From Eutreptiella sp. 'Long Island Sound 2002' (taxonomy: Eukaryota > Protista > Euglenida): 64,000 nt of DNA. Made by a program: the position numbers and the translations under genes. The stretch is from positions 140,926,001 to 140,990,000 of the forward strand of contig OZ038378.1 in NCBI GenBank assembly GCA_964036045.1, read 5' to 3'. Positions 1,773 through 17,176 of this stretch are shown one piece after another. Each line of letters starts with the position of its first letter. Position 1 is the first letter of the stretch. The notes beneath the pieces were generated by a model that had not been told where the DNA came from, did no database searches, and was given only the letters and a program-made list of their open reading frames with translations.

Positions 1773-2572
1773 ACAGTGCAACTCCTGCAATCCACTGCCT
1801 CACTGCCTGGGGGCGGTGGGCAGTGCAACTCCTGCAATGCACTGCCTCACTGCCCGGGGGCAGTGGGCAGTGCAACTCCTGCAATGCACCGCCTCACTGC
1901 CCTGGGGCAGTGGGCTGTGCAACTCCTGCAATGCACCGCCTCACTGCCCTGCGGCAGTGGACGGCGCAACTCCCGCAATGCACCGCCTCACTGCCTGGGG
2001 GCAGTGGGCAGTGCAACTCCTGCAATACACTGCCTCACTGCCCTGGGGCAGTGGGCAGTGGAACTCCTGCAATGCACTGCCTCACTGCCTGGGGGCAGTG
2101 GACAGTGCAACTCCTGCAATGCACTGTCTCACTGCCCTGGGACGGTGGGCAGTGTAACTTCTGCAATGCACTGTCTCACTGCCCCGGGGCAGTGGGCAGT
2201 GCAACTCCTGCAATGCACTACCTCACTGCCTGGGGGCAGTGGGCAGTGGAACTCCTGCAATGCACTGCCCCACTGCCTGGGGGCAGTGGGCAGTGGAACC
2301 CCTGCAAGGCACGGCCTCACCGCCTTGGGGGCAGTGGGCAGTGCAACTCCTGCAACGCACTGCCTCGCTGCCTGGGGGCAGTGGGCAGTGCAACTCCTGC
2401 AATGCACTGCCTCGCTGCCTGGGGGTAGTGGGCAGTGCAACTTCTGCAATGCACTGCCTCACTGCCCTGGGGCAGTTGGCAGTGGAACTCCTGCAATGCA
2501 CTGCCTCGCTGCCTGGGGGCAGTGGACAGTGCAACTTTGGCAATGCACTGCCCACTGCCCCAGGGCAGTGAG
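1765..2572. repeat. 47-bp hairpin satellite, block 2
   Basis: Same unit as 1-1100; joins the LINE-B fragment through a GGGCAGT microhomology near 1765. Confidence 0.95.
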
Positions 2573-2616
2573 GTGTGGTGTGGTGTGGTGTGGTATGGTG
2601 TGGTGTGGTGTGGTGT
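2572..2616. repeat. (GTGTG)n tract
   Basis: Direct reading. Confidence 0.95.
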
Positions 2617-3429
2617 GGAGGAGGAGGAGGAGGAGGAGCGCCTGCCGTGGTCCCACGTACGGTGAGCCGTGGCGTCGTCCCTGGGGGGCCCCACGCAGGC
2701 TCTGCCGAGGGAGTCCTCCGTCTTACCTCCGCTAGAGTAAGATGAATCTCGTCGCACACCTGAGAACGCCCCTCCCAGCAGGCCGTCTGGGTCTAAGCAC
2801 CGGTGTACGACCACGCTACGGTCTGATCAGCTCTCCGGTCCCGGCCACCGACTGCCCCGATCTGTCCTGGATCCACCCGAGTCAGCGTTCCAAGATCAAC
2901 GTGAGCTGAGAAGGTGTGGGTCTCCCGGGGCCTCACCCCCGACTTGAAAACGTCGCCGGGCTAAATAGAACGCGGCCCAGCACGACTATGCGCACTGCCG
3001 GTGGGCTGAGTACCGCCGGCGTCGCGAGTACGGTCACGCCACACGATCACGCGCACCCCCGGTGGCCTGGGTACCCCCGGGTTATGTGAGTGCGGGACGT
3101 GCGTCACGGCCATAGCACCACGGTGGTGCACCGCCGTGGAGGTCACCGACGACGCCCGGCCGCAAAGGCCGGGCCCAAACGACAAGCCCCACGATACGTG
3201 TACCGAGACGGCACGTGACCGAGAAAATGGCACCACGATGGTGCCCGAGCGAGACGGCGACGTTCGTCAATGGCACGTGAGGCGGTGAGTACCGCCGATG
3301 ACACGTCACCTCTGCACGGGGTGTCACGGAGCTTGGCGGAGCGCCAGGTGCAGACCTCGCCATGGTGCCTCGTGTATCGGCCTGGAGGATACACCATGGC
3401 CAGGCTGGCGCACGAAGACCGTCTGGGCA

Positions 3430-3804
3430 GCACCACGGTGGCGCTCTGCCCTGAAGGTTGCGCCACGACGGCGCATGCGGACGTTGACTGCACCACGGCG
3501 GCGCCATGTCACTGAACTGGCGCCACGTCGGCGCAAGGCTGTCTGGGCAGCGCCGCGGTGGCGCTCTGCCCTGAGGATTGCGCCACGGTTTCGCACGGCC
3601 CTAGAGGAGGCGCAGCACTGGCATACCCGTACGTCAGCTGCGCCACGATGGCGCACGTGCACGCTGGCGGCACCACGATGGCGCTTCGCCACTGGACTGG
3701 CGCCACGGCGGCGTAGGGCTGTCTGGGCAGCGCCACGATGGCGCCCTGCCCCGAAGATCGTGCCACAGCGGCGCACGTATTCGTCGGCGGCACCACGGTG
3801 GTAC
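3430..3804. repeat. 30-bp-period array: 15-nt palindrome GCGCCACGRTGGCGC plus 15-nt spacer, 13 units
   Basis: Palindrome variants start at 3430, 3460, 3490 and so on to 3790 in exact register; spacers recur with a four-unit (120-bp) period. Confidence 0.9.
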
Positions 3805-4004
3805 CCTGCCAGTGAGCCGGCGCGTGAAGGGGGAGCGTGGGTGAGCCTGGGCGGCTGGGGGGCCCTGTCCCTCACGGCACAGCACCGTTCTCCCTCGGGG
3901 GGTGCCCTCGGGGGGTGGCAGGGGTGGGCCCTGGGCTGACGCGGGTGAGCGAGCGAGCGAGTGAGTGAGTGGGTGAGTGAGTGAGTGAGTGAGTAAACAC
4001 GTGG

Positions 4005-4084
4005 CCGTTGCCTGGCTGTGCTTGTGGGCAACCCGTCCCACAGCTACCATCCTGGGGTTTTTTATCCTGGTGCCAGGCCACCAG
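4005..4084 (-). ncRNA. Structured 5' leader (partner copy 1)
   Basis: Minus strand CTGGTG-GCCTGG-CACCAG hairpin, A-rich linker, CCAGG, then a TGTGGG/CCCACA stem; homologous to 14638-14716. Confidence 0.6.
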
Positions 4085-4197
4085 ATATCGAGCAGGTGCA
4101 CTGTGTGTGGCAGCGGTGCATCTGCCCCTCACAGGCTGCACCTCTGGCCCAGGGAGGAGTCCTGGACGGGTGGCGGGCGGGGTGGGCCCGGCCTGAC
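4085..4197 (-). mobile_element. Fragment of the interior of the copy-2 partner subfamily
   Basis: Matches ~16320-16400 (GTGCATCTG...GGCCCAGGGAGG...GGGTGGGCCCGGCCTGAC). Confidence 0.75.
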
Positions 4198-4318
4198 GAG
4201 GTGGTGTGGTGTGATGTGGTGTGGTGCGGTGCGGTGCAGTGCGGTGCGGTGCGGTGCGGTGAGGTGCGGTGCGGTGTGGTGTGGTGAGGTGCGGTGCGGT
4301 GCGGTGCGGTGTGGTGTG
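4198..4318. repeat. (GTGTG/GTGCG)n tract
   Basis: Direct reading. Confidence 0.95.
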
Positions 4319-5220
4319 CCGAAGGCGCTGTTACCAAAAGGCAAAGGCCGGGATGTCTACCCACGGGTACAGGTAAACGGGCTGGGCTGTGTGTGTTGTG
4401 TGCGCGCTGTGTGTAAGTGTGTTGTGGCATGGCCGGACCAGTGCACTCTCGCACTTGGCCGACACTGCCTTGCCGACGCCTGCGCGCAGTCACACAGGGT
4501 CTCATTTGCCCACTGCACCCTGCGTGCCGCGCTGCACAACCAGTGCCTTCTGTGTGGTGCCGCACTGCTTGGTGCTCTGCACCACACTGCACTGTGTGTG
4601 CCCTGCTGCACTGTTGCCGTGGGCAGGGGGCAGTGGGCAGTGGAACTCCTGCAATGCACTGCCGCACTGCCTGGGGGCATTGGGCAGTGGACCTCCTGCA
4701 ATGCACTGCCCCACTGCCTGGGGGCAGTGGGTAGTGGACCTCCTGCAATCCACTGCCTGACTGCCCGGGGGCAGTGGGCAGTGCAACTCCTGCAATACAC
4801 TGCCCCACTGCCTTGGGGCAGTGGGCAGTGGACCTCCTTCAATACACCGCCTCACTGCCTGGGGGCAGTGGGCAGTGGACCTCCTGCAATACACTGCCGC
4901 ACTGCCTGGGGGCAGTGGGCAGTGGACCTCCTTCAATGCACTGCTCCACTGCCTGGGGGCAGTAGGCAGTGGACCTCCCGCAACACACTGCCTCACTGCC
5001 TGGGGGCAGTGGGCAGTGGACTACCTCCTGCAATACACTGCCCCACTGCCTGGGGGCAGTGGGCAGTGCAACTCCTGCAATACACGGCCGCATTGCCTGG
5101 GGGCAGTGGGCAGTGCAACTCCTGCAATGCATTGCCTCACTGCCCTCGGGCAGTAGGCAGTGGAACTCCTGCAATACACTGCCTCACTGCCTGGGGGCAG
5201 TGGGTAGTGCAACTCCTGGT
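4319..5220 (-). mobile_element. Putative satellite-carrying non-autonomous element with a LINE-B 3' tail
   Basis: 4319-~4420 is nearly identical to the LINE-B tail at 1179-1285. About 200 bp of CACTGC-rich sequence follows and grades into the 47-bp satellite, and pentamer tracts lie on both sides. Confidence 0.6.
4625..5220. repeat. 47-bp hairpin satellite, block 3
   Basis: Same unit as blocks 1 and 2. Confidence 0.95.
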
Positions 5221-5235
5221 GGTGTGGTGTGGTGT

Positions 5236-5645
5236 GGAGGAGGAGGAGGAGGAGGAGCGCCTGCCGCGGTCCCACGTACGGTGAGCCTTGGCGTCGTCCC
5301 TCGGGGGCCAAACGCAGGCTCTGCCGAGGGAGTCCTCCGTTTTACCTCCGCTAGAGCAAGACGAATCTCGTCGCACACCTGAGAACGCTCCTCCCAGCAG
5401 GCCGTCTGGGTCACAACGTCAGTGTACGACAACGCTACGGCTCGATCTGCTCTCCGGTCCCGGCCACCAACCGCTCCGAACTGTCCTGGATCCACCCGAG
5501 TAAGCGTTCCAAGATCAACGTGCACGGAAGATGTGGGTCTCCCGGGGCATCACCTCCGACTTAGAACGCCGCCAGACAAGGAGCGCGGTCCGGCACGACT
5601 GCGCGCAGCACCGGAACGGTCCGGGCGCGGGAGGTCGAGGACGGG
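5236..5645 (-). other. LINE-A 3' UTR/tail with a stem-loop and (CCT)n terminus
   Basis: Follows the ORF2 TGA and is conserved in 2617-~3000 and 14966-~15350. The sense strand has a TCCCTCGG/CCGAGGGA stem shortly before the tail. Confidence 0.85.
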
Positions 5646-8600
5646 TCACGGGCGGGGATAGGGCCACGGGGCGGGCCGACCCATGGCCACCTGCATGTCC
5701 TTAAAGACCGTGCGGGGTCCTTGGGAAGCCGCAGTGAGGATGGCCGAGAACGCAGAATGTAGTGCGGCACACCACGAGGGGGTCACATCTCCACAGAGGC
5801 CGGCTTCCAGGCTCCGTCCATTGCCACCGTAATGGATGGCCCAGAGGCGGCGTCGACCTGGGAGATGAGGGGCAAGCCCGTGCCGTCCGAGACTGTCCAA
5901 GATGATGACGTCATGGGGATTCTGCTCCACCTCCTGCCACATGGTCGGCGGAATCTGGTTCGACCCGTTGTACACATACAGGACACGGTACGGACTGTGC
6001 TTGCTCCGGGTGGAGATGACGGACTTCACCTTAGGGGCCAGGAGGAGGTCCCCTGATAGCCAGAGTCCTAGGAGGATGTCCCAGGCCGGCCACCTGCCCG
6101 AGCCGGGCGTTGGGGCCCAGTTGGCTACGTGATACCACTCTGGCGGTGGGTCGTTGGCGAGGGACTGGTTAACGGGGGCCCGCGGTAGGGGAGAGAGGTG
6201 GTCGGCAAGAGGTAGAACGGGCACCGCGTGCCGCTTATGTAGGAGAACGGTAGTGAGAACGACATCGCAGAGTAGGCGACGGAGACGCGCAGGACGCAGA
6301 CCTCTGTGCAGCAGGGCATCCCTGTGTGGCGTGGAGATGGCTCCGAGACGACCAACAGTGTAGGTTGCGATGGTGTGGTGGGCCGGGGAGCCATCCACAG
6401 CCAGTATGAACGGCTCGTCCCCCCAAAGGACGAGGGTGCCCCAAGCAGTGGGCGTACAGTGGCGCCAGGCATGGCACCTCTGAGAGAGTCGGGCCGCCAG
6501 CCACCGATGGTAGTGGGCGCGGATGAGCGGGTCTAGCGGGCACGAGAGGATATGGTCCCCGGAGGCGGGCATGGTGCAGAGGGGGCAGGACGTATCTCTC
6601 GGGGGGAACAGGGAGAGGCGGATGCCGGTGACCGTGAGGTGGTCCCCCCACGTGATGAGACCGTGGCTGACGATGTTGGCGTACTCGTTGAGGTCGGGGA
6701 GGTGTTGTGGCGGGGGGGACGCAGAGAAGGCGTGGTGGGAGGCGAGCAAGGCGCGGCGCGCGTGGGGCACGGCGTCGTGGACCTGGAGGCCCGCGTGGGA
6801 GAAGCAGACGCGGGGTTTCTGTAGGGGGCCGAGCCATCCCACGGCGTCCGGGCAATTGTCCGCAGCTTGCCCTGCCGCTTCGTCCACCCGGTCCAGCAGG
6901 GTATCGAGCCAGGTGCCGGCGATATGGGAATAGAGGTGATGGGGAGGGGCATGACCGTGGGCCATGTCGCGACACGATCTTATGAGATCTCCCTGCAGCG
7001 AGTCTTCCGGCTCGCGGCGCCCTTCCTGCGCCGTGATGTACCCTTTGCAGTCCGCGAAGTGCCACGCACCGGATCGGAAGCCGATGGCAGGGTCGGCTGA
7101 GGGCCCCTTGGCGGTGAGGGCCACCCACGCCGTGTACAGCTCCGCCGTGTAGGCGTTGTCCAGCCTCAAGGGGATGGGGACGGGGTACACCTGGTACCGG
7201 AGGGTGACGGGGCAGAACACCGCCACTGCCCCGCCGCAGCGCCGGGTCTTCGGGCACCACGACGCGTCGTGGAGGATCCCATAGTTCTCAGGGAGCCAGG
7301 AGAACGTGGGGACGGTCGCAGTCACCGCTTGGCAGCGTCTAACCGGGGGGACGGTGCCGACCGGCGGAGTGGGGCGGGGCGAGGCCCGGGGCCACCCCTT
7401 GCGTCGCGCGTCCTCTGTACTGCGACGGCCCGCAAGCATCCACGCGTGGGTGTCCTGGACCTCGAGTCCGGGTGACGACAGGGCCAGCACATGGGGGGTG
7501 TGGTGTGGCAGATGGCTGTCAGGGGGTAAGTGGATGGCGATGTCGCACCGGTGGCACAGGGCAACAAATAGATCGTGGTCTGTGGGGTGTGCGGTGCACC
7601 GGAGTCCGAGCTCCGGGGTGAGGCAGGGCTGGGAAGGATGGAACCGCCAGAGGGCAGTGAGGAGCCCGTGGCGCGTGGACCGGCAGACCAGGGAGTTGGG
7701 GTGGTTCAGGTGTCGGATGTAGACGCCGAAGAAGTTAGTAAACCCAACGACCGGTGCCGGGGGTATACCGACTCCCCCTTCGGGGACCTCACGGAGGAAG
7801 TGAGCAGAGGCGGAGAGGGTCCACCCAGCGGTGGCGCGCATGGCCGAGGCGGTCATGGCGTCCAGCACGCGCAGGGCCCCGTAGGAGGGGGGGCGGACAC
7901 TGGTAAACCAGTTGACCGTCCCATGACACTTGGCAGTATACATGGCGAGGGGGTAGTGGGCGGGGAGTCGTGGGGCGCGGAGCGCCCGGCACGCAGCGCG
8001 GGCGCCCGAGAACAGGCGCCGGGAGTCGACGGGATGGAAGAGGTGGGGAAGGGCATGGCGGCCAAGGACGCGGACGTAGTCCTGGCTCGTGGCACATCGC
8101 ACGGGGTGACCATTGAGGTATACCGTGTCGTTGAGGAAATAGACCTGACCATCGCGCATGTCGGTGCCGATCAAGACCGTTTTTGTTGGGTCTGGGTGGA
8201 GGTTGGTGAGGCGGCCCGCTCTCTCAATGCCGCTGGCGAGGGCGGGCAAATGGCAACGGTCGCCTGGCAGCCACTGGGTGTCATCCATCAGGAGAACCCG
8301 GTTCAGCGGGCCCGCGGGGGTGTCGGTGGGGGGGATGGAACGGCAGGCTTCGTGCCCCCGAACTTCGCCATATATGCAGTACTTCATGCCGGACACGGGG
8401 CATCCTTGCCCCGTGCCGGCCCCCAGCCGGGTGGAGGACGGAGAGCGTCCGTCAGCTCCCCCCATGTGCACCTCAAGGGCGCGGTCATGGTGCTGAAGGG
8501 TCGCGGCGTCGGTCGGGGAGATCCCTGCGGCGGTGAGGACGGCGTACTCGGTGGTGTGGTTGATTGAGCCATAGGCGTGGCGGACATCGTCCGACAGGAC

Positions 8601-10940
8601 CCACGCTTCAAGGCGTCTGCGCCAGCGGTCCCACCATACATCGTGTAGGACGCGGAGTAGCTCCACGGAGGAGCAGTGCGGGGACATCCCGAACTGGTAG
8701 GGCGGCAGGATGCCGTTCTGAACCAGGCGGGGTTGGTAGTGGTCTTTGATGAGGGCAGCCGTGAGCTTCCATATCGTGGCCAGATTGGTCAGCGGTCTGC
8801 CGTTCGCAATGGGGCCGTGCGGCGTCTTTTTCGGAAGGTTGATGAAGTCTGCAGAGTGTGCCTGGGGCACGGGCACCCCACGGAGAATACTGTTGATCAG
8901 GCTCACGATCGCCGCAAACTGGGCATCCTCCAATTGTCCGAACAGCCGGTACTCCAGTAAGTCGTGGTACGGCACAGTGGCCGCCGCCCGGCGGATGATG
9001 GCCCGCAGGTTTGCGGTGGTGGCGTTGGGTGGTGGGCCGAGCGGTCTTTCCTCCCATCCCGTGATGGTCCGGACGCGCGCGAGTGAGAGCGCCTCAAGAG
9101 GGGCAAGGTGCCTTTGGCGCAGCTGGTCCAACGCAACTGCGGCTTGTTGATGAAGAGGTACTGGGACGCCCACCACGTAGACCGGATCCGCTGGGGGTAC
9201 GTAGCGCGCCCCCAACGTGCGGCGGTAGTCCACTTTGGTGGGTTGGCCAGGGGCAGCGGGTAGGGGCGCCAGCCCTACATCCTTCTCCAGAAGGAGAACG
9301 TCCCAGGCCGCTCGGATGCGTTCTTTGAGGCGGGCGACCTCCACGAGGTGTGACGATTGGGACGCCCAATCCGGGTAGGCGAGCGTGTAGCGTTGAAGGT
9401 TGGTGACGTGGACACGTACCGTCGACGGTACCGGCTGGCTGGGGACGGGGGGCCCGTAGGCAGCCGTAGCCGCGGTGTATAGCGCTGAGGTCACCTCGGT
9501 ATAGCGTGGCTGCGCTTCGGGCGCGCCTGGGGGCGGCGCAGCGAGTTCGGCCTGAAAGGTGTCGTTGAGGGTGCGGAGCTGGCTGGCGAGGGGCTCCCGC
9601 GGGATGGGGAAGCGGCCCTTTTTCGAAGGGCATACCAATTGGGGCGCTGGCGGGAGGTCATGGAGGGTGGCAGTCACGGGTAGGTGGTCAGATGGGAAAC
9701 TGGAATCGGAGCGCACCTCCGTGGTGTGGGCTGCTTCCGAAGGGGCGCGGAGGAAGATGTGGTCCAGGGCACCGGCGAAACCTTGCGGGCTCACCCACGT
9801 GGGGGCCTCCGCAAGGGGGCGTAGACGGCGCATCCCAAGGCGCGTGAGCGTGGGGAGGACGAGGTCACAGAGGGAGGCAGGGGAGACAGGGAGGTGCGAG
9901 ACCCAGCGGCAGTTGGCGTTCAGGTCCCCTGTCAGGACAACCACTCTAGCCGGGGTGAGGAGGAGGTACGGGTACACCCAATCCAGGACTTCTTGGAGCG
10001 TGTCGAGGTTCCCGTCGGCGGGGAGATACACGTTGGCGTGGCAGTGGGTCACGCCAGCCATGGTGAAGTGCGTGACGAGGGCTCGTCCCGACGGGTGGGC
10101 GCTGTGGCCGGTCACGACCAGGTCCGGGGTCCTGTAGAGGAGGGTGGCACATCCCCCAGCTATTCTTGCAGGTGCCTGGATGGTGTGGTACAGGGGGTGC
10201 ACCCGTTGGATGATCTGGGGCCCCGCTTCTTGAACATGCAGGGTTAGCGGGTACTGGCACTCGCGCACCAGGACGTCCAGGGCGCGGAGCTTGGGTCGCA
10301 GGGACATCTGCACGTTGAGGGTCATCACGTCTGGGCGGGGCGACACGTGGCCGGTGGGGGGGGGACCAGGGCAGGAGCTGGCGACGGTGGAGTGCTGGGT
10401 TAGCTTGCGGTCCACGGCTGCGGGGAGGGCGCAAGGTAGGCCTCGCACCCACTTGCGGAGGTGCCGGTGGTGGTACGTGGCCGCCATCGCCAAGACACTG
10501 GCCCGGGTGAGGCCTGTGGCTGTGATGGAGACGCGGCTGTGTAGGGATTGTGGGAGGACCACGTGGTGATGCTCGGGCAAGATGAAGGAGGTGGGTGGCA
10601 GGCCTTTGCGGCAGAGCTGCAACTGATGGGAGCCCGTCACCTGCACACAGTGCACGGCGCCCACTAACGACAGAACGTTACGGGGCCAGGGGTCCGCCCC
10701 GCTGCACGCCCGGTAGTAGTGCACACCCACCGGCAGGTGCAGGCACATTTCGAGGGCATAGGGGGGCGTGATGAACTGGGCAGTGCCCGAGGCCGGTACC
10801 GGTACCAGGCCCCACTCTCTGGGGGGGGAGCTGGGAGTGTATGCGCCCAGGTGCAGGTCCCGGACATGGGGGACGCCGTCGAGGTGGGAGTGGCGGAGCT
10901 GAGACACGGCGGCAGGGATGTCCTCGTTGCGCCCCGCCAT
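5646..10940 (-). CDS. LINE ORF2 (1764 aa): unknown N-domain, APE endonuclease, reverse transcriptase, RNase H, CCHC finger, unknown C-domain
   Basis: APE (~10331-9663): TLNV, HVQE, ANVYLP, LTGDLNA, ALDHIF, SDHLPV. RT (~9000-8040): GRPLTNL, YQFGM, LSDDVRHAYGSI, GTGQGCPVS, LLMDD. RNase H (~7285-6860): LHDAS, TAEL, FADC, YSHI, RVDEAA. Finger (6587-6540): CPLC-x7-H-x3-C. Confidence 0.95.
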   Translation of the reverse strand: MAGRNEDIPAAVSQLRHSHLDGVPHVRDLHLGAYTPSSPPREWGLVPVPASGTAQFITPPYALEMCLHLPVGVHYYRACSGADPWPRNVLSLVGAVHCVQVTGSHQLQLCRKGLPPTSFILPEHHHVVLPQSLHSRVSITATGLTRASVLAMAATYHHRHLRKWVRGLPCALPAAVDRKLTQHSTVASSCPGPPPTGHVSPRPDVMTLNVQMSLRPKLRALDVLVRECQYPLTLHVQEAGPQIIQRVHPLYHTIQAPARIAGGCATLLYRTPDLVVTGHSAHPSGRALVTHFTMAGVTHCHANVYLPADGNLDTLQEVLDWVYPYLLLTPARVVVLTGDLNANCRWVSHLPVSPASLCDLVLPTLTRLGMRRLRPLAEAPTWVSPQGFAGALDHIFLRAPSEAAHTTEVRSDSSFPSDHLPVTATLHDLPPAPQLVCPSKKGRFPIPREPLASQLRTLNDTFQAELAAPPPGAPEAQPRYTEVTSALYTAATAAYGPPVPSQPVPSTVRVHVTNLQRYTLAYPDWASQSSHLVEVARLKERIRAAWDVLLLEKDVGLAPLPAAPGQPTKVDYRRTLGARYVPPADPVYVVGVPVPLHQQAAVALDQLRQRHLAPLEALSLARVRTITGWEERPLGPPPNATTANLRAIIRRAAATVPYHDLLEYRLFGQLEDAQFAAIVSLINSILRGVPVPQAHSADFINLPKKTPHGPIANGRPLTNLATIWKLTAALIKDHYQPRLVQNGILPPYQFGMSPHCSSVELLRVLHDVWWDRWRRRLEAWVLSDDVRHAYGSINHTTEYAVLTAAGISPTDAATLQHHDRALEVHMGGADGRSPSSTRLGAGTGQGCPVSGMKYCIYGEVRGHEACRSIPPTDTPAGPLNRVLLMDDTQWLPGDRCHLPALASGIERAGRLTNLHPDPTKTVLIGTDMRDGQVYFLNDTVYLNGHPVRCATSQDYVRVLGRHALPHLFHPVDSRRLFSGARAACRALRAPRLPAHYPLAMYTAKCHGTVNWFTSVRPPSYGALRVLDAMTASAMRATAGWTLSASAHFLREVPEGGVGIPPAPVVGFTNFFGVYIRHLNHPNSLVCRSTRHGLLTALWRFHPSQPCLTPELGLRCTAHPTDHDLFVALCHRCDIAIHLPPDSHLPHHTPHVLALSSPGLEVQDTHAWMLAGRRSTEDARRKGWPRASPRPTPPVGTVPPVRRCQAVTATVPTFSWLPENYGILHDASWCPKTRRCGGAVAVFCPVTLRYQVYPVPIPLRLDNAYTAELYTAWVALTAKGPSADPAIGFRSGAWHFADCKGYITAQEGRREPEDSLQGDLIRSCRDMAHGHAPPHHLYSHIAGTWLDTLLDRVDEAAGQAADNCPDAVGWLGPLQKPRVCFSHAGLQVHDAVPHARRALLASHHAFSASPPPQHLPDLNEYANIVSHGLITWGDHLTVTGIRLSLFPPRDTSCPLCTMPASGDHILSCPLDPLIRAHYHRWLAARLSQRCHAWRHCTPTAWGTLVLWGDEPFILAVDGSPAHHTIATYTVGRLGAISTPHRDALLHRGLRPARLRRLLCDVVLTTVLLHKRHAVPVLPLADHLSPLPRAPVNQSLANDPPPEWYHVANWAPTPGSGRWPAWDILLGLWLSGDLLLAPKVKSVISTRSKHSPYRVLYVYNGSNQIPPTMWQEVEQNPHDVIILDSLGRHGLAPHLPGRRRLWAIHYGGNGRSLEAGLCGDVTPSWCAALHSAFSAILTAASQGPRTVFKDMQVAMGRPAPWPYPRP

Positions 10941-10948
10941 GTCCCGGG

Positions 10949-13948
10949 TTACCGGTCCCGCGGACGCCGACCGAAGTACGGCTGGTAGCGGTGGGGGTCG
11001 GCTGGGGGGCTCCAGGGCGGGGGAGCGTAGGGGTTGTGGGCCATGGCCACTCGGGGGTCGTGGGGGTCCCCCGAGTACGGGTAGGGCAGGAGAGGGGCTG
11101 CTGCATGGTGGTCGTGGCGGCTGGAAAGCGCTTGTGGCTCATCGCGGTACGCGCTGCGACGCCTCGGCGGCGGGCTGTCGCGGCGATGGCCTGGGCTGCG
11201 GCGGCGGGACGGGGACCGGTCCGAGCGGCGGGGGCTGTACCTGCGCTGATATTTGGAGTCTGGTTCTCCGTCCGATCCCGACGTTGCCGTAAGGTCCACC
11301 TGATCCTCAGGGTCCCGTGGACGGCGCTGCTTCCCGCGGCTTCCCCGATGAGTCTTCCGGGGCGGACGGTCTCGGTCTCGGTCAGGGTCAGGCACCCAGG
11401 GCGTAAACGGTTGTTTCTTCGATTCGGCCCACGTCACTCGCCAGCCACGAGCCGTGTGTTGCCTCGTCAGTCGCATGCCGCGCTCGTACTCCGCTGGTCG
11501 GATTCCGACGATTGTGAACTTGGATGTATGGTTCAATTGTTCTTCAGTAATAGAGGAAAGGCCTGCACCAAATTTATCCCGAAGGATACCACCGAGGAGT
11601 CCTGCATCAACTTCACCGGACGGCGGATCGTCGACTTCTTGCCAGCCGACCCACAGGGCTTTCGAGTAGACTTGCGGATCGATTTTTTGGGGTGTATACC
11701 CCTTCTTTTTCGCTGCGCCCTGTGCCTGGTTGGCGGCTGCAGCTTCTGATGGGGAGGTGGCTGGGCTGGCGGAAACCTGCTGGACTGCAGGGGGGTTGGA
11801 GAGGAAGGAGCGCAGGACTTCCGCGATGCCGGGCAGGCTGGGCGCGTGGCTGTGGACCCAGGCCCACTGCTCCCGGATCGGCGACTGCGGGAGGGTGTCG
11901 ACCTTCGCGCCGTACTGGCGGAAGAGCTGGAGGTGGAGCGCGTGCGCAACCTCGTCCTCACAGCCCTTGGGGATCCCCGGGATCCACTCCAGCAGGTCGG
12001 TCAGGGCGGCATCGGCAGGCGACGGCAGAGACGGCGTCGGCTGGGCGGTCGCGCCCGGTGCCCGAAAGGCAGAGACCGCCCTCGGCTTAGGGATCGGTTC
12101 CGGGACTGCGAACGACAGTTCGGGCGCACGCGCAGGGGCCTCCGGGACCGGCACGGCGCCTGGCGCGGCCATAGCCCTACGGAGGACGTCGGCCAACTCC
12201 TCGAGGTTGGGTGCCTGGGGCGAGGTGAGAACTGCTGCGGCGAGGATGACCGGCACGAGGACCAGGAACTGCTGAGAGCCGGGGGGGGGCAGCTCGAATG
12301 AAGCCGGAACGGTACTGCGCACGGCGTTGGCGAATGCCGGCGGCGTGGACTGGAGGCCGTGGAGTCTGGTGGCGATGGACAGGAGGGGGGGTACCGACCT
12401 GATGAAGTTGTTGAGCCTGACGGCTTCGGTCTGCCGCTGTGCCGCGGCGCAACGCTGGGCCTGCTGCTGGGCATTATCCCGTTCGGTGCGCATCACGTCC
12501 AGGTCCCGCGCGAGGGACTCCAGGTCGCCCCGTGCCACGGCCAGCTCCCGTCGTTGGGCCTCATACTCGTCATGCAATTGAGCGTAGTCGGTGGAGTAGG
12601 CCGTGACATCCAGGTCCGGGACAAAAGGCTCCCCCACCTGGGAGGGGCTGGGGGGGGCCGACCCGACGGCCGGGGCCGGTGACTCCGGAGGCGTGGGGTC
12701 TGCGGCAGCCGGTGGTACCTGGGAGGCAGGCTCTGGGAGATTGAAAGAAAGCCTTGTCTGTTCGGGCAACAGTGATGAAGGCGATGGTTCGGACCCTGAG
12801 GGGGTGGGCTTGCCCTGGGCCTTGTACAGGGCTGACGCTGGGGTGAACGCCGCCGTGGCGAACAGAGTGCCGGCGGGGCTGGGCGCCGATTGTCCTTTGG
12901 TGAGGTAAGGTGCGTGGCTGGGCGGCGTGAGCGGGGGCGGGTTGGCGGTGTCGGCGATGCCGGCCTGCAGCAGGGCGAAAGTGGGGGCTGTGGCCCAGGA
13001 GTGCTCACCAGCCTGCTCGATCTGATGCAGCAGCTCCACGCTGCGGATCGGCAAGATCGAGCACTCGAGCAGCGGCCGCAGCTGTTCGGGGGTCCACATG
13101 CCCTTGTTGGCGAGGGCGGGGGGTGTGGGAACGGGGGCTGGCGTGTACTGTCCTGTGAGGCAGACGGAGGAGGCCCACGCTAGGAGCCCGAACTTCAGCG
13201 GGACGAGGTCTGCTGTCGGGATGTGGGCTGCCTGCAGGACCGCATGCACGTCGTTGGGTAGCGCCCAAAAGGCCGCAACTACCTCTCGGGTGCGGAGGCG
13301 GTCCCATGACGGTCTGAGGTGGGGGGCAAGGAACTGGCTGATGGGCTTGTGGATCTTGTGGGAGACCTTCTGGCTTTGGATGTCCGGAGGGCCGGCAGTG
13401 TCGACGGGCGGTGGCTGTTCGCGGGCTGTGTACAGGCCCTTGAAGACTTGGTTGCGGAGGCGTGACGCCGAAATTGGGGCATGGCTTGGGCTCCACCGCG
13501 TGACGAGAGCCGCTGTGAGGGCCTCAGGGTCCTTGGAGATATACTCCAGCAGTGGGCCTCCTTGTACCAGCGACAGGGGGACGTGCTCGATGACCTTCGT
13601 GTCAGACGGGCCTGCGGCGACCGTTACGGTGGCTGTGAGCAGGAGCCCCCGCGGCGTCCACACCCCCGTCACCGCTGTAATAGCCTGGATGTCGCCGTTG
13701 GCAGCCGTCCACCGCAGGGCATCACACAAGTCAGCCAGGGCGGGGTCGGTGGCCTGGATAGCCGTATCTGCCGCTTCCAGTGCGTCATCCTTCAGCATGT
13801 CCAGTTCTCGCAGCAGACGGTCAGCATCGTCGGACTGGGCGATGTCCATCAGAAACATGGGGAACGGCCCCTGACGAATGGCGCCGCCTCGACCGGTGTC
13901 GGGGGCGGGAGAGGGGGTGTCCTGGGACGGTGTTGAGCGGTCTGACAT
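10949..13948 (-). CDS. LINE ORF1 (~999 aa from the ATG at 13948): coiled coil, RRM-like domain, RS/RD-rich tail
   Basis: Open frame directly upstream of ORF2 with an 8-nt gap. Heptad-rich YAQLHDEYEAQRRELAVARGDLESLARDLDVMRTERD (~12600-12400); KALWVGW...ILRDKFG...KFTIVGI...WRVTWAE has RRM topology (~11670-11415); RRYSPRRSDRSPSRRRSP tail. The track starts the ORF at a TTG at 13990. Confidence 0.88.
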   Translation of the reverse strand: MSDRSTPSQDTPSPAPDTGRGGAIRQGPFPMFLMDIAQSDDADRLLRELDMLKDDALEAADTAIQATDPALADLCDALRWTAANGDIQAITAVTGVWTPRGLLLTATVTVAAGPSDTKVIEHVPLSLVQGGPLLEYISKDPEALTAALVTRWSPSHAPISASRLRNQVFKGLYTAREQPPPVDTAGPPDIQSQKVSHKIHKPISQFLAPHLRPSWDRLRTREVVAAFWALPNDVHAVLQAAHIPTADLVPLKFGLLAWASSVCLTGQYTPAPVPTPPALANKGMWTPEQLRPLLECSILPIRSVELLHQIEQAGEHSWATAPTFALLQAGIADTANPPPLTPPSHAPYLTKGQSAPSPAGTLFATAAFTPASALYKAQGKPTPSGSEPSPSSLLPEQTRLSFNLPEPASQVPPAAADPTPPESPAPAVGSAPPSPSQVGEPFVPDLDVTAYSTDYAQLHDEYEAQRRELAVARGDLESLARDLDVMRTERDNAQQQAQRCAAAQRQTEAVRLNNFIRSVPPLLSIATRLHGLQSTPPAFANAVRSTVPASFELPPPGSQQFLVLVPVILAAAVLTSPQAPNLEELADVLRRAMAAPGAVPVPEAPARAPELSFAVPEPIPKPRAVSAFRAPGATAQPTPSLPSPADAALTDLLEWIPGIPKGCEDEVAHALHLQLFRQYGAKVDTLPQSPIREQWAWVHSHAPSLPGIAEVLRSFLSNPPAVQQVSASPATSPSEAAAANQAQGAAKKKGYTPQKIDPQVYSKALWVGWQEVDDPPSGEVDAGLLGGILRDKFGAGLSSITEEQLNHTSKFTIVGIRPAEYERGMRLTRQHTARGWRVTWAESKKQPFTPWVPDPDRDRDRPPRKTHRGSRGKQRRPRDPEDQVDLTATSGSDGEPDSKYQRRYSPRRSDRSPSRRRSPGHRRDSPPPRRRSAYRDEPQALSSRHDHHAAAPLLPYPYSGDPHDPRVAMAHNPYAPPPWSPPADPHRYQPYFGRRPRDR

Positions 13949-14637
13949 GGTAGCTGTGGCGAGAAAAGAGCGGGTGGCCTGTGGCCGCAATATGTTGGGG
14001 GGGGGGAGCAGATCGAGGTGTCGGCAAACGGAGGTGCACTGACATCATAGGCAGCCCCAGTCGGATGGGGCGCGCAGGAGAGAAACAAGGGGTACCACGA
14101 GCGTGGCCATAGTGTGACAAAACAAAGAGCATGGCGCGATGGCGCGGAGTAACATGGGGCCGCCTGGCGGACCGGGTCGGTGAGCGGGGGTCCCAGGACA
14201 CACAGGGCGGGGATGCGAGGGGAGCACCGCACTGGCGCGTGGTGCTGCAACCCTAGTGGCGCACGGGAGCGAGGGGCCCCACGTTGGGACGACGAATCGG
14301 ACGACTGATGATACCCCTGCACAAGGCGTCACGCTTGAGCGGCGGATACGTCGAATGCAGTCCCCGTCGCGGCTCCCCGCGTAGCGGCCTGGAAGATTGC
14401 CACGGCGAGGTCGACGTCTTGCCAGAGACGAACGTATAACGACGTGCCCACTGTGAGCAGGAAACGGCTTGCAAGGGGGAGGGACGCACTTGAGGTGCGG
14501 CACTCAGCCCTTGGAGACACGGGACGAAGAGGGAGAGAGAGAGTGCACCATACGGGTGGAGCTGAGCGGAGAGGGGGCCACGATGGCAGAGCTGAGTCAC
14601 GTGGTGGCACGACTATCACGACGATTCACGATTGGTG

Positions 14638-14716
14638 TCGAGCGTGGCAGTGCGTGTAGGCAATCCGTCCTACAGCTACCATCCTGAGGGTTTTTAGACT
14701 GGTGCCAGGTCACCAG
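14638..14716 (-). ncRNA. Structured 5' leader of LINE-A
   Basis: Sense CTGGTGACCTGGCACCAGTCTAAAAACCCTCAGGATGGTAGCTGTAGGACGGATTGCCTACACGCACTGCCACGCTCGA; four copies in the window, with one compensatory base-pair change. Confidence 0.6.
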
Positions 14717-14965
14717 TGGTGTGGTGTGGTGTGGTGTGGTGTGATGCGGTGAGGTGCGGTGTAGTGGGGTGCGGTGCGGTGCGGTGAGGTGCGGTGCGGT
14801 GCGGTGCGGTGTGGTGCTGTGTGGTGCGGTGCGGTGCGGTGCGGTGCGGTGCGGTGCGGTGCGGTGCGGTGAGGTGCGGTGCGGTGCGGTGCGGTGCGGT
14901 GGGGTGGGGTGGGGTGGGGTGGGGTGGGGTGTGGTGCGGTGCGGTGCGGTGCGTTGCGGTGCGGT
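14717..14965. repeat. Mixed (GTGTG/GTGCG/GTGGG)n tract
   Basis: Direct reading. Confidence 0.95.
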
Positions 14966-15782
14966 GGAGGAGGAGGAGGAGGAGGAGGAGGAGCGCCTGC
15001 CGTGGTCCCACGTACGGTGAGCCGTGGCGTCGTCCCTCGGGGGCCCCACGCAGGCTCTGCCGAGGGGGTCCTCCGTCTTACCTCCGCTAGAGTAAGACGA
15101 ATCTCGTCGCACACCTGAGAACGCTCCTCCCAGCAGGCCGTCTGGGTCACAGCGTCGGTGTACGACAACGCTACGGTCCGATCTGCTCTCCGGTCCCGGC
15201 CACCGACTGCCCCGAACTGTCCTGGATCCACCCGAGTCAGCGTTCCAAGATCAACGTGAGCGGAAGATGTGGGTCTCCCGGGGCATCACCCCCGACTTGA
15301 AAGCGGCGCCGGGCTAAATAGAACGCGGCCCAGCACGACTATGCGCATTGCCGGCGGGCTGAGTACCGCCGGCGTCGCGAGTACGGTCACGCTACACGAT
15401 CACGCGCACCGCCGGTGGCCTGGGTACCCCCGGGTTCTGTGAGTGCGGGACGTGCGTCATTGCCATAGCACCACGGTGGTGCACCGCCGTGGAGGTCACC
15501 GAGGACGCCCGGCCGCAAAGGCCGGGCCCAAACGACGAGCCCTACGATACGCGCACTGAGACGGTACGTGACCGAGAAAGTGGCACCACGATGGCGCCTG
15601 AGCGAGACGACGACGTTCGCCGATGGCACGTGAGGCGGTGAGTACCGCCGATGACACGTCACCTCTGCACGGGGTGTCACGGAGCTTGGCGGAGCGCCAG
15701 GTGCAGACCTCGCCATGGTGCCTCGAGTATTGGCCTGGAGGACACACCATGGCCAGGCTGGCGCACGAAGACTGTTTGGGCT

Positions 15783-16292
15783 GCGCCACGGTGGCGCTCT
15801 GCCCTGAAGGTTGCGCCACAACGGCGCACGTGTACGTTGACCGCACCACGGTGGTGCCACGTCACTGAACTGGCGCCACGTCGGCGCAGGGCTGTCTGGG
15901 CAGCGCCGCGGTGGCGTTCTGCCGTGAGGATTGCGCCATGATGGCGCACGTGTACGTTGGCGGCACCACGATGGCGCTCTGCCACTGAACTGGCGCCACG
16001 GAGGCATGGGGCTGTCCGGGCAGTGCCACGACGGCGCTGTGCCCCGAACACTGCGCCACGGTAGCTGCACCACAGTGGTGTGCTGCCACGGAAGTGGCGC
16101 CACGTTGGCGCTGGACTGTTTGGGCGGCGCCACGGCGGCGCTCTGCCAAGAAGGCCGTGCCACGACGGCGCTCTGCCCAGAAGGCCGCGCCACGACGGCG
16201 CACGGGTACGTTCGCGGCGCCACGATGGTGCCCTGCCATTGAGCCCGCGCCATGTCGGCGCAGAGCTATCGGGGCAGGCGCCACGTTGGCGT
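15783..16292. repeat. 30-bp-period hairpin/spacer array, ~18 units
   Basis: Units at 15783 through 16053 every 30 bp, a 16-bp deletion, then 16067 through 16247 every 30 bp, and one more at 16278. Confidence 0.9.
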
Positions 16293-16444
16293 CTGGCGGT
16301 CGGGGGGAGGCCACGTATGTGCATCTGTCCCCCACAGGACTGCATGTCTGGCCCAGGGAGGGGTCCTGGACGGTTGGCGGGCGGGGTGGGCCCGGCCTGA
16401 CACAGGGAAGACGCACGAGAAATCGAGACGTATCACGACTGGCT

Positions 16445-16523
16445 TCGAGCGTGGCAATGCGTGTGGGCAATCCGTCCCACAGCTACCATCCTGAGGGTTT
16501 TTAGACTGGTGCCAGTTCACCAG
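16445..16523 (-). ncRNA. Structured 5' leader (partner copy 2)
   Basis: Homologous to 14638-14716. Confidence 0.6.
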
Positions 16524-16849
16524 AGGTGCGGTGGGGTGCGGTGCGGTGCGGTGCGGTGCGGTGCGGTGCGGTGGGGTGCGGTGCGGTGGGGTGGGGTGGG
16601 GTGGGTTGTGGTGTGGTGTGGTGCGGTGCGGTGCGGTGCGGTGGGGTGCGGTGCGGTGCGGTGGGGTGGGGTGGGGTGGGGTGGGGTGGTGTGGGGTGTG
16701 GTGTGGTGTGGTGCGGTGCGGTGCGGTGGGGTGTGGTGCGGTGCGGTGCGGTGCGGTGCGGTGCGGTGCGGTGGGGTGTGGTGCGGTGCGGTGCGGTGCG
16801 GTGTGGTGCGGTGTGGTGCGGTGCGGTGCGGTGCGGTGCGGTGCGGCGC
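16524..16849. repeat. Mixed pentamer tract
   Basis: Direct reading. Confidence 0.95.
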
Positions 16850-17176
16850 GGCGCACGGGTACGTTCGCGGCGCCACGATGGTGCCCTGCCATTGAGCCCG
16901 CGCCATGTCGGCGCAGAGCTGTCGGGGCAGGCGCCACGTTGGCGTCTGGCGGTCGGGGGGAGGCCACGTATGTGCATCTGTCCCCCACAGGACTGCATGT
17001 CTGGCCCAGGGAGGGGTCCTGGACGGTTGGCGGGCGGGGTGGGCCCGGCCTGACACAGGGAAGACGCACGAGAAATCGAGACGTATCACGACTGGCTTCG
17101 AGCGTGGCAATGCGTGTGGGCAATCCGTCCCACAGCTACCATCCTGAGGGTTTTTAGACTGGTGCCAGGTCACCAG
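16850..17176 (-). mobile_element. Duplicate of the 5' ~327 bp of partner copy 2
   Basis: Near-identical to 16197-16523 (offset 653 bp); lacks a 3' tail. Confidence 0.9.

What the first reader, a model, noticed from the sequence alone, without database searches (positions are those of the whole stretch)
14638..14716. Shared ~79-nt 5' leader folds as an H-type pseudoknot plus covarying hairpin: candidate new ribozyme or internal promoter
Seen in four copies (4005-4084, 14638-14716, 16445-16523, 17098-17176), sense strand: stem CTGGTG/CACCAG; loop (A/G)CCTGG (AACTGG in the 16445 copy) able to pair with downstream YCAGG across an A-rich linker; then a long stem TGGTAG-C-TGTRGG...CCYACA...CTGCCA. 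LINE-A has TGTAGG/CCTACA where the other three have TGTGGG/CCCACA, a true compensatory change, and the pseudoknot has G-U versus G-C. Established: the ~77-nt signature shared by trypanosomatid ingi/RIME and L1Tc/NARTc acts as a promoter and HDV-like ribozyme, and R2 elements use 5' ribozymes to cut out of co-transcripts. Inference: an element embedded in tandem arrays needs similar 5' processing. By eye this fold does not fit HDV, hammerhead, twister or pistol consensus (it is pistol-like in P1/linker/pseudoknot but lacks P2 and the GCG).
Basis: partly seen in the sequence, partly recalled or inferred. Interest (0 to 1): 0.75.

Follow-up and report, generated by a model that had tools for sequence, protein, structure and literature searches.

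The report
Conserved 5' end module of LINE
The 79-base block is the conserved first stretch of a very young jumping gene (a LINE) and of its short parasitic derivatives in a large, probably Euglena-type genome; it is clearly kept by selection and one hairpin in it is supported, but nothing shows it to be a self-cutting RNA, and one family argues against that.

Summary
The four copies are real and read in sense on the minus strand. Exact-pattern counts give about 1,100 copies genome-wide.

- **Families A and B.** In the 9.5-kb LINE-A and the 1.5-kb derivative family B, the block starts at the same first base in all 60 sampled copies, behind unrelated flanks.
- **Selection.** A and B differ at 2 of 79 block positions but at 7 of the next 23. 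The two block differences form one compensatory base pair (A-U versus G-C).
- **Intermediates.** The G.U form of that pair occurs 25 times genome-wide and the A.C mismatch 5 times. This supports one hairpin.
- **Weak points.**
  - The 5' hairpin never varies.
  - The pseudoknot pairing arises in about 27% of shuffles.
  - Fold z-scores are only -1.0 to -1.3.
  - Two of the four window copies lie in one 653-bp tandem duplication.
  - AACTGG is a private mutation.
- **Ribozyme tests.** No Rfam family matches, and no HDV-like fold fits all three families.
- **Family C.** In the copy at 4005 the block is internal. All 205 exact-matching C copies keep the junction to a 115-nt extension upstream of it (seen in full in 30 sampled copies), so no cleavage at block base 1 is evident there.

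Best reading: a start-site and promoter module whose RNA carries a selected hairpin. A new ribozyme is unlikely (about 7%).

The parts
14638..14716 (-). 79-nt 5'-terminal block of LINE-A. Base 1 is window 14716. It holds the 5' hairpin nt 1-6/13-18, an A-rich linker, and the long bulged hairpin nt 36-48/57-72 with the A46-U59 pair.
5236..14716 (-). Full-length LINE-A, about 9.5 kb. It has a 5' UTR of roughly 0.7 kb; ORF1 at 13990-10949 (1013 codons, no Pfam match); ORF2 at 10940-5646 (1764 aa, weak APE endonuclease and RT matches); and a 3' region ending in (TCC)n.
17098..17176 (-). Family B block with the G46-C59 pair. This copy sits in the upstream unit of a 653-bp tandem duplication and is followed by only 328 nt of B and then a microsatellite.
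   Evidence: (D11)
16445..16523 (-). Family B block of the complete 1.56-kb B element (16523 to about 14966). It carries the private C8A mutation (AACTGG).
4005..4084 (-). Family C block. It is internal and carries four CCWGG pentamers.
4085..4199 (-). 115-nt 5' extension of family C, homologous to family B nt 123-205. The true 5' end of the C element lies near 4199.
14718..14993 (-). (TCC)n tail of the upstream B element followed by a (GCACC)n microsatellite that abuts LINE-A base 1.

Best explanation
The block is the conserved 5'-terminal cis-module of a young, very active non-LTR retrotransposon (LINE-A) and of the short elements descended from it by internal deletion and cargo gain. It marks the first transcribed base.

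Most likely it acts in two ways. As DNA, it is the element's internal start-site or core-promoter determinant. This is inferred from general LINE logic and from the exact 5' ends. As RNA, it forms a 5' hairpin and a long bulged hairpin that selection maintains, probably for recognition by the element's proteins or for protecting the RNA end. The long hairpin has direct sequence support: one compensatory pair with a G.U intermediate.

It is not a member of any known ribozyme class and probably does not cut itself.
For: - The 5' end lies exactly at base 1 in 30 of 30 A copies and 30 of 30 B copies, with unrelated upstream flanks: several microsatellites, a 47-nt satellite in both orientations, and unique DNA.
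- Conservation has a sharp boundary between A and B: 2 of 79 differences in the block against 7 of 23 just downstream (Fisher p = 3.5e-4), after which homology ends.
- The only two A/B differences are the two sides of one predicted pair. The chance of that is about 0.003.
- Genome-wide, the G46/T59 form occurs 25 times on many chromosomes, and the A46/C59 form 5 times.
- Non-coding families B and C keep the block, so its role is not translation of the LINE ORFs.
- About 1,115 5' blocks against 1,142 3' termini genome-wide shows that nearly all copies are full length.
Against: - Promoter activity was not tested, and Euglena-type promoters are poorly known.
- Family C starts 115 nt upstream of the block. 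The block therefore does not always set the start site.
- RNA stability is unremarkable (z about -1), and the long hairpin is not in the MFE fold of the first 200 nt.
- Only one pair covaries. By the shuffle control, 47 of 500 shuffles do as well.
- The 25 G.U copies may descend from a single master, so the 25:5 asymmetry overstates the evidence.
- Templated (quasi-palindrome) mutation could give a compensatory change without selection.
Confidence: 0.45

Rival explanations
1. The block is a purely RNA-level, non-catalytic cis-element. It would be a structured 5' module bound by the LINE's own proteins, or protecting an uncapped end. It would be needed to finish reverse transcription and integration, in the way the 5' RNA of R2 directs second-strand steps. 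The promoter would lie elsewhere.
For: - There is almost no 5' truncation: 1,115 5' blocks against 1,142 3' ends. A promoter alone would not explain this.
- The block is retained by non-autonomous B and C together with the LINE's 3' end.
- It tolerates an internal position in C.
- One compensatory pair, with G.U favoured over A.C.
Against: - Loops are as conserved as stems between A and B. That fits sequence-specific recognition, but it fits a DNA element equally well.
- Thermodynamic support is weak.
- No protein-binding data exist.
- An element with exact 5' ends still needs a start-site determinant somewhere, and the block is the only 5' sequence that A and B share.
Confidence: 0.25
2. The block is a new class of self-cleaving ribozyme, or a Pr77-like dual promoter and ribozyme. 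It would cut read-through transcripts exactly 5' of base 1.
For: - 5' termini are exact and independent of the flank.
- 17 of 90 copies sit head-to-tail behind another element within 1.5 kb, so co-transcripts are possible.
- The stretch is conserved, partly structured, and about 79 nt long.
- There is precedent in the related trypanosomatids (L1TcRz in Pr77; PMC3185411, PMC4035085).
Against: - No Rfam family matches at gathering score or at E up to 5-10.
- The only perfect partner for nt 1-6 is nt 13-18, which leaves no room for the P2 and P3 helices of an HDV-like fold. The descriptor search found no solution shared by A, B and C.
- Family C keeps 115 nt 5' of the block: 205 exact junction matches, 30 sampled copies with the whole extension, and none without it, giving a 95% upper bound of about 11.
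- The pseudoknot is not above chance.
Confidence: 0.07
3. The block has no special function. The families are simply recent relatives, and the block is shared by descent.
For: - B is a deletion derivative of A, and C is a rearranged B-like element.
- Copies are 98-100% identical.
- Only three lineages can be compared.
- The divergence of the C block (8 of 76) is not different from the rest of C against B (p = 0.15).
Against: - The conservation step between A and B is sharp: 2 of 79 against 7 of 23, p = 3.5e-4.
- Both A/B differences fall in one base pair (about 0.003).
- Family C made all three possible CCWGG-creating changes (p about 1e-4, post hoc). That is directional change, not decay.
Confidence: 0.13

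Closest known systems
Pr77 hallmark of trypanosomatid ingi/RIME, L1Tc/NARTc, DIRE and SIDER elements (internal Pol II promoter plus the HDV-like ribozyme L1TcRz)
   Same: - A block of about 77-79 nt sits at the very 5' end of an autonomous LINE and is shared with its short non-autonomous derivatives.
- The 5' terminus is exact.
- The host is probably in the same phylum (Euglenozoa), according to earlier notes that I did not verify.
   Different: - There is no evident sequence similarity. Pr77 begins CCCTGGCTCAGCCGG and has CCACC at 16-20 and the essential CGTG element at +25 to +28 (PMC4748587). Here nt 25-28 are AACC, and the first CGTG lies near +88.
- No HDV-like fold fits.
- Neither promoter nor ribozyme activity has been tested here.
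HDV-like ribozymes at the 5' ends of R2, RTE, Baggins and L1Tc retrotransposons
   Same: This is the main class whose whole catalytic fold lies 3' of the cut. Such a ribozyme could produce flank-independent exact 5' ends like those seen here.
   Different: - The nested double pseudoknot (P1, P1.1, P2, P3, P4) cannot be drawn, because the 5' end pairs locally with nt 13-18.
- No Rfam HDV-family hit was found.
- Family C shows no processing at the block.
Pistol ribozyme
   Same: A hairpin whose loop could pair downstream across an A-rich linker.
   Different: - No Rfam match.
- The P2 helix and the conserved core are lacking.
- Pistol cuts inside its motif, so it would not leave the block intact at an RNA 5' end.
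- The loop pairing is at chance level.
5' protein-binding RNA of R2 (a structured 5' RNA with a pseudoknot that directs the second half of integration)
   Same: A structured 5' RNA module of a LINE that lands in repeats. Near-absence of 5'-truncated copies would fit a role of the 5' end in completing integration.
   Different: The R2 module is about 300 nt and R2 uses a restriction-like endonuclease, whereas this element has an APE-type endonuclease. No binding data or homology exist.

Membership tests
HDV-like self-cleaving ribozyme | A P1 helix formed by the first 6-7 nt with a strand lying 3' of a P3 hairpin, all nested inside P2 (double pseudoknot). | tested here: not met
   Descriptor search on the first 200 nt of A, B and C. 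The only perfect partner of nt 1-6 is nt 13-18. The partial solutions differ between families and reach outside the conserved block.
HDV-like self-cleaving ribozyme | A match to the Rfam HDV-type covariance models. | tested here: not met
   cmscan at gathering score on the whole window, and at E up to 10 and up to 5 on the A, B and C copies. No ribozyme family was reported.
HDV-like self-cleaving ribozyme | Self-cleavage immediately 5' of base 1. | tested here: inconclusive
   There is no biochemical test. A and B have exact 5' ends, which is compatible. Family C retains the 115 nt upstream of the block (205 exact junction matches, full extension in 30 sampled copies, 0 hits without it), which argues against.
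Pr77 hallmark (ingi/L1Tc clade) | The first ~77 nt are shared by the autonomous LINE and its non-autonomous derivatives. | tested here: met
   A and B share nt 1-79 (2 differences) plus the last ~376 nt. C shares 75 nt of the block plus ~395 nt of the 3' end. In C, however, the block is internal.
Pr77 hallmark (ingi/L1Tc clade) | Sequence homology to the Pr77 consensus, including CGTG at +25 to +28. | tested here: not met
   Pr77 landmarks were taken from PMC4748587 and compared by eye with the block. The landmarks are absent.
Pr77 hallmark (ingi/L1Tc clade) | The host LINE belongs to the ingi/L1Tc clade. | not tested
   ORF2 gives only weak Pfam APE and RT matches and no PDB sequence match. 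The word search returned only copies from the same genome. The LINE clade was not determined.
Pistol, hammerhead, twister and hatchet ribozymes | A match to the family covariance model or conserved core. | tested here: not met
   No hits.
H-type pseudoknot | The loop of stem 1 pairs with a downstream strand, supported above chance or by covariation. | tested here: inconclusive
   The geometry is feasible: a 1-nt loop 1, an 11-nt A-rich loop 3 and 5 bp. But such pairing occurs in 27-29% of shuffles, the pairs change on one side only, and a competing partner exists at nt 69-74.
Internally deleted non-autonomous LINE derivative (RIME/NARTc/SIDE type) | Both termini of the parent LINE are retained, coding capacity is lost, and the same tail is used. 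| tested here: met
   blastn comparison of B and C against LINE-A. All three have the same 3' terminus and (TCC)n tail.

The most novel reading that the evidence does not exclude
The block is a self-cleaving RNA of a class not yet described, or a Pr77-like dual promoter and ribozyme that arose independently in euglenids. It would free LINE RNA from read-through transcripts at its first base, and family C would carry an inactivated copy.
Probability: 0.07. Interest if true: 0.8.

Novelty: new member of a known kind. Interest (0 to 1): 0.35.

Why it matters
The biology of LINEs in euglenids is almost undescribed. Here a roughly 1,100-copy, apparently still active system shows three things:
- a sharply bounded 79-nt 5' module;
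- exact 5' ends;
- almost no 5' truncation.

This parallels the Pr77 hallmark of the related trypanosomatids without sharing its sequence or fold. If the block proves to be a compact promoter, it would be a rare defined start-site element for Euglena and a practical tool for expression vectors. If it proves to be a protein-binding or end-protecting RNA, it would help explain how this LINE achieves full-length insertion. As a ribozyme candidate it is weak.

Tried and rejected
- **Rfam.** Searched at gathering score and at permissive E-values on all three families. Nothing relevant.
- **HDV-like descriptor search.** No consistent fold.
- **Y at position 46.** A pattern for a pyrimidine at nt 46, to find further covariants, gave 0 copies.
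- **Miscounted gap.** One pattern with a miscounted gap wasted a search, but it showed a diverged copy at C21:14107394.
- **More genome DNA.** Covariation therefore rests on three lineages.
- **ORF2 word search.** It returned only copies from the same genome. PDB gave nothing and the protein atlas gave only generic APE-RT(-RNase H) clusters. The LINE clade was not determined.
- **Big HMMER search.** Not run, because the protein is not open and the claim does not rest on it.
- **Relaxed constraint in the C block.** Rejected: 8 of 76 against 61 of 981, p = 0.15.
- **(CCACA)n as a strict target.** Rejected: upstream flanks are diverse.
- **Organism identity.** This comes from earlier notes only and was not verified here.

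Full report
**1. What is there**

The finding lies on the minus strand. Read in sense, the block begins CTGGTGACCTGG at window 14716 and runs to about 14638.

The window comes from a 2.28-Gb eukaryotic assembly. Earlier notes of this scan call it Euglena, and one says diplonemid. I did not verify this. A 2.37-Gb Euglena gracilis assembly is published (PMC11252322).

The copy at 14716 is the 5' end of a roughly 9.5-kb non-LTR retrotransposon, LINE-A:
- ORF1 has 1013 codons and no Pfam match.
- ORF2 has 1764 aa, with weak APE-endonuclease and reverse-transcriptase matches.
- The element ends in a conserved 3' region and a (TCC)n tail.

**2. Three lineages, not four independent copies**

blastn of the elements shows three lineages.
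- **Family B** (copies at 16523 and 17176) consists of LINE-A nt 1-97, then cargo with 60-nt repeats, then the last ~376 nt of LINE-A.
- **Family C** (copy at 4084) is a rearranged B-like element. It has 83 nt homologous to B nt 123-205, then about 30 nt, then the block (75 nt), then a (CACT)n run, cargo and the common 3' end.

The 16445 and 17098 copies lie in one 653-bp tandem duplication that is 100% identical over 300 nt (D11). The AACTGG loop of the 16445 copy is a private mutation, because the family has ACCTGG.

**3. Genome-wide picture**

DNA searches of the whole assembly returned 40 copies per family at 98-100% identity. Exact-pattern counts are:

| Pattern | Count |
|---|---|
| Block nt 3-45 | 1,115 |
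| Hairpin core nt 38-62 | 1,046 |
| 3' terminus plus tail | 1,142 |

So 5' and 3' ends occur about one to one. On contig C1 the listed 5' and 3' positions pair up at about 9.4 kb (family A) or 1.5-2.0 kb (families B and C). 5' truncation is therefore rare, which is unusual for a LINE.

**4. The 5' terminus**

In 30 of 30 A copies and 30 of 30 B copies the element starts at the same C. The upstream flanks are unrelated:
- CA-rich microsatellites of at least six unit types;
- a 47-nt satellite in both orientations;
- unique DNA.

The element is therefore not strictly (CCACA)n-targeted. In 17 of 90 sampled copies a co-oriented element's 3' end lies within 1.5 kb upstream, and the gap is filled by a microsatellite or satellite.

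Family C is different. All 30 sampled copies carry the same 115-nt extension 5' of the block, and only beyond that are the flanks variable. Genome-wide, 205 copies have the exact extension/block junction. No C-type block matched a filter for non-extension flanks, which puts a 95% upper bound of about 11 on such copies. In C, then, the propagating RNA begins 115 nt upstream and is not cut at block base 1.

**5. Selection on the block**

Between the A and B family sequences, nt 1-79 differ at two positions (46 and 59). The next 23 nt differ at seven positions, and homology then ends. Fisher's test gives p = 3.5e-4.

The two differences are the two sides of one predicted pair, A46-U59 in A and G46-C59 in B and C. 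The chance of two random changes doing this is about 0.003.

Across the genome the G/T combination (a G.U wobble in RNA) occurs 25 times on many chromosomes, and the A/C mismatch 5 times. A binomial test gives p = 3e-4. No neutral mutational asymmetry between the two routes is expected. The copies are not independent, however, so this shows at most that a G.U master was viable.

Positions that vary between families elsewhere are:
- 7, 19, 20, 53 and 63, which are unpaired in the model;
- 30, which switches between G.U and G-C in the proposed pseudoknot;
- 68, where C breaks the A40-U68 pair.

**6. What is weak**

- The 5' hairpin never varies, so it is neither supported nor refuted.
- The pseudoknot has only one-sided changes. 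A 5-bp partner for the loop arises in 27-29% of shuffles.
- The same loop can pair with nt 69-74. In family C this alternative helix is perfected to 7 bp and becomes part of the MFE fold.
- Fold z-scores for the 76-nt block are -1.0 to -1.3.
- In the first 200 nt of LINE-A the long hairpin is not in the MFE structure.
- By the tool's shuffle control, the single covarying pair is matched in 47 of 500 shuffles.

**7. Ribozyme tests**

- Rfam reports no family at gathering score in the window. Nothing relevant appears at E up to 10 or up to 5 on the A, B and C copies.
- An explicit HDV-like descriptor search (P1 from base 1, P3, P2) found no solution shared by the families. The only perfect partner of nt 1-6 is nt 13-18, which leaves no room for P2 and P3.
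- Ribozymes that cut inside their motif (pistol, hammerhead, twister) could not leave the whole block at an RNA 5' end.
- Family C shows no processing at the block.

A new ribozyme class cannot be excluded by computation, but nothing positive points to it.

**8. Comparison with Pr77**

The trypanosomatid hallmark begins CCCTGGCTCAGCCGG. It has CCACC at 16-20 and an essential CGTG element at +25 to +28 (PMC4748587). The block has none of these landmarks; nt 25-28 are AACC. The resemblance is architectural only: the first ~77-79 nt are shared by a LINE and its deletion derivatives, and the 5' end is exact. It is not sequence or fold homology. The LINE clade could not be determined.

**9. An unexpected detail**

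Family C's block differs from B at 8 positions. Three of them (T19G, T30C, C73G) are exactly the only three single substitutions, out of 228 possible, that create a new CCWGG pentamer. The post hoc probability is about 1e-4. C has six CCWGG in its first 200 nt against roughly one expected. This is directional change, not decay. It could reflect a DNA motif cluster for a factor, or extra partners for the CCUGG loop. I cannot tell which.

**10. Reading**

The shown facts are:
- a sharply bounded, selected 79-nt module at an exact 5' terminus;
- one selected hairpin;
- retention of the block in non-coding derivatives;
- full-length insertion as the rule;
- no known ribozyme fold;
- no cutting in family C.

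From these I infer that the block is the element's start-site and core-promoter determinant, and that its RNA forms a structured 5' end used in cis (confidence 0.45).

The rivals are:
- an RNA-only module for the retrotransposition machinery (0.25);
- shared descent without special function (0.13);
- a new ribozyme (0.07).

**11. Limits**

No diverged relatives could be sampled, and covariation rests on three lineages of one genome.

Noticed in passing
whole genome G000 (pattern counts); window 5236-14716: Exact-match counts give 1,115 5' blocks and 1,142 3' termini, and the 5' and 3' positions pair up at 9.4 kb or 1.5-2 kb. Almost all copies are full length, which is unusual for a LINE.
   Followed up: partly
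window 4005-4199 (minus strand); L031-L060: Family C made all three of the only three possible single substitutions that create a new CCWGG pentamer in the block (nt 19, 30, 73). It has six CCWGG in its first 200 nt against about one expected. The meaning is unknown.
   Followed up: partly
window 4085-4199 (minus strand): Family C's 5' extension is homologous to family B nt 123-205. C is therefore a permuted chimera, possibly made by template switching, that nevertheless amplified to 205 or more copies with its own fixed 5' end.
   Followed up: partly
window 16196-17176: A 653-bp tandem duplication of microsatellite plus the first 328 nt of a B element, 100% identical over 300 nt. It is not a retrotransposition product.
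   Followed up: yes
window 2568-2640, 5180-5260, 14718-14993: All three families end in the same ~20-nt terminus followed by (TCC)n, and then a CA-rich microsatellite whose unit differs from locus to locus. 17 of 90 sampled copies sit head-to-tail behind another element within 1.5 kb.
   Followed up: partly
L007, L013, L016, L022, L028, L062, L072, L077, L080-L082 (upstream flanks): Insertions into one orientation of the 47-nt satellite cluster within about 10 nt, around CTGCCCCCAGG. This suggests a preferred site inside the satellite unit.
   Followed up: no
G000:C21:14107394-14107437: A diverged block copy with an altered 3' strand of the 5' hairpin and an altered pseudoknot partner. It may belong to an older family. 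It could not be fetched.
   Followed up: no
window 3423-3823 and 15772-16250: Arrays of 30/60/120-nt GC-rich hairpin-like repeats form the cargo of families B and C. Another note of this scan already covers them.
   Followed up: no
window 10949-13990 (minus strand): ORF1 of LINE-A has 1013 codons (first Met at codon 15) and no Pfam match even at E up to 1.
   Followed up: partly
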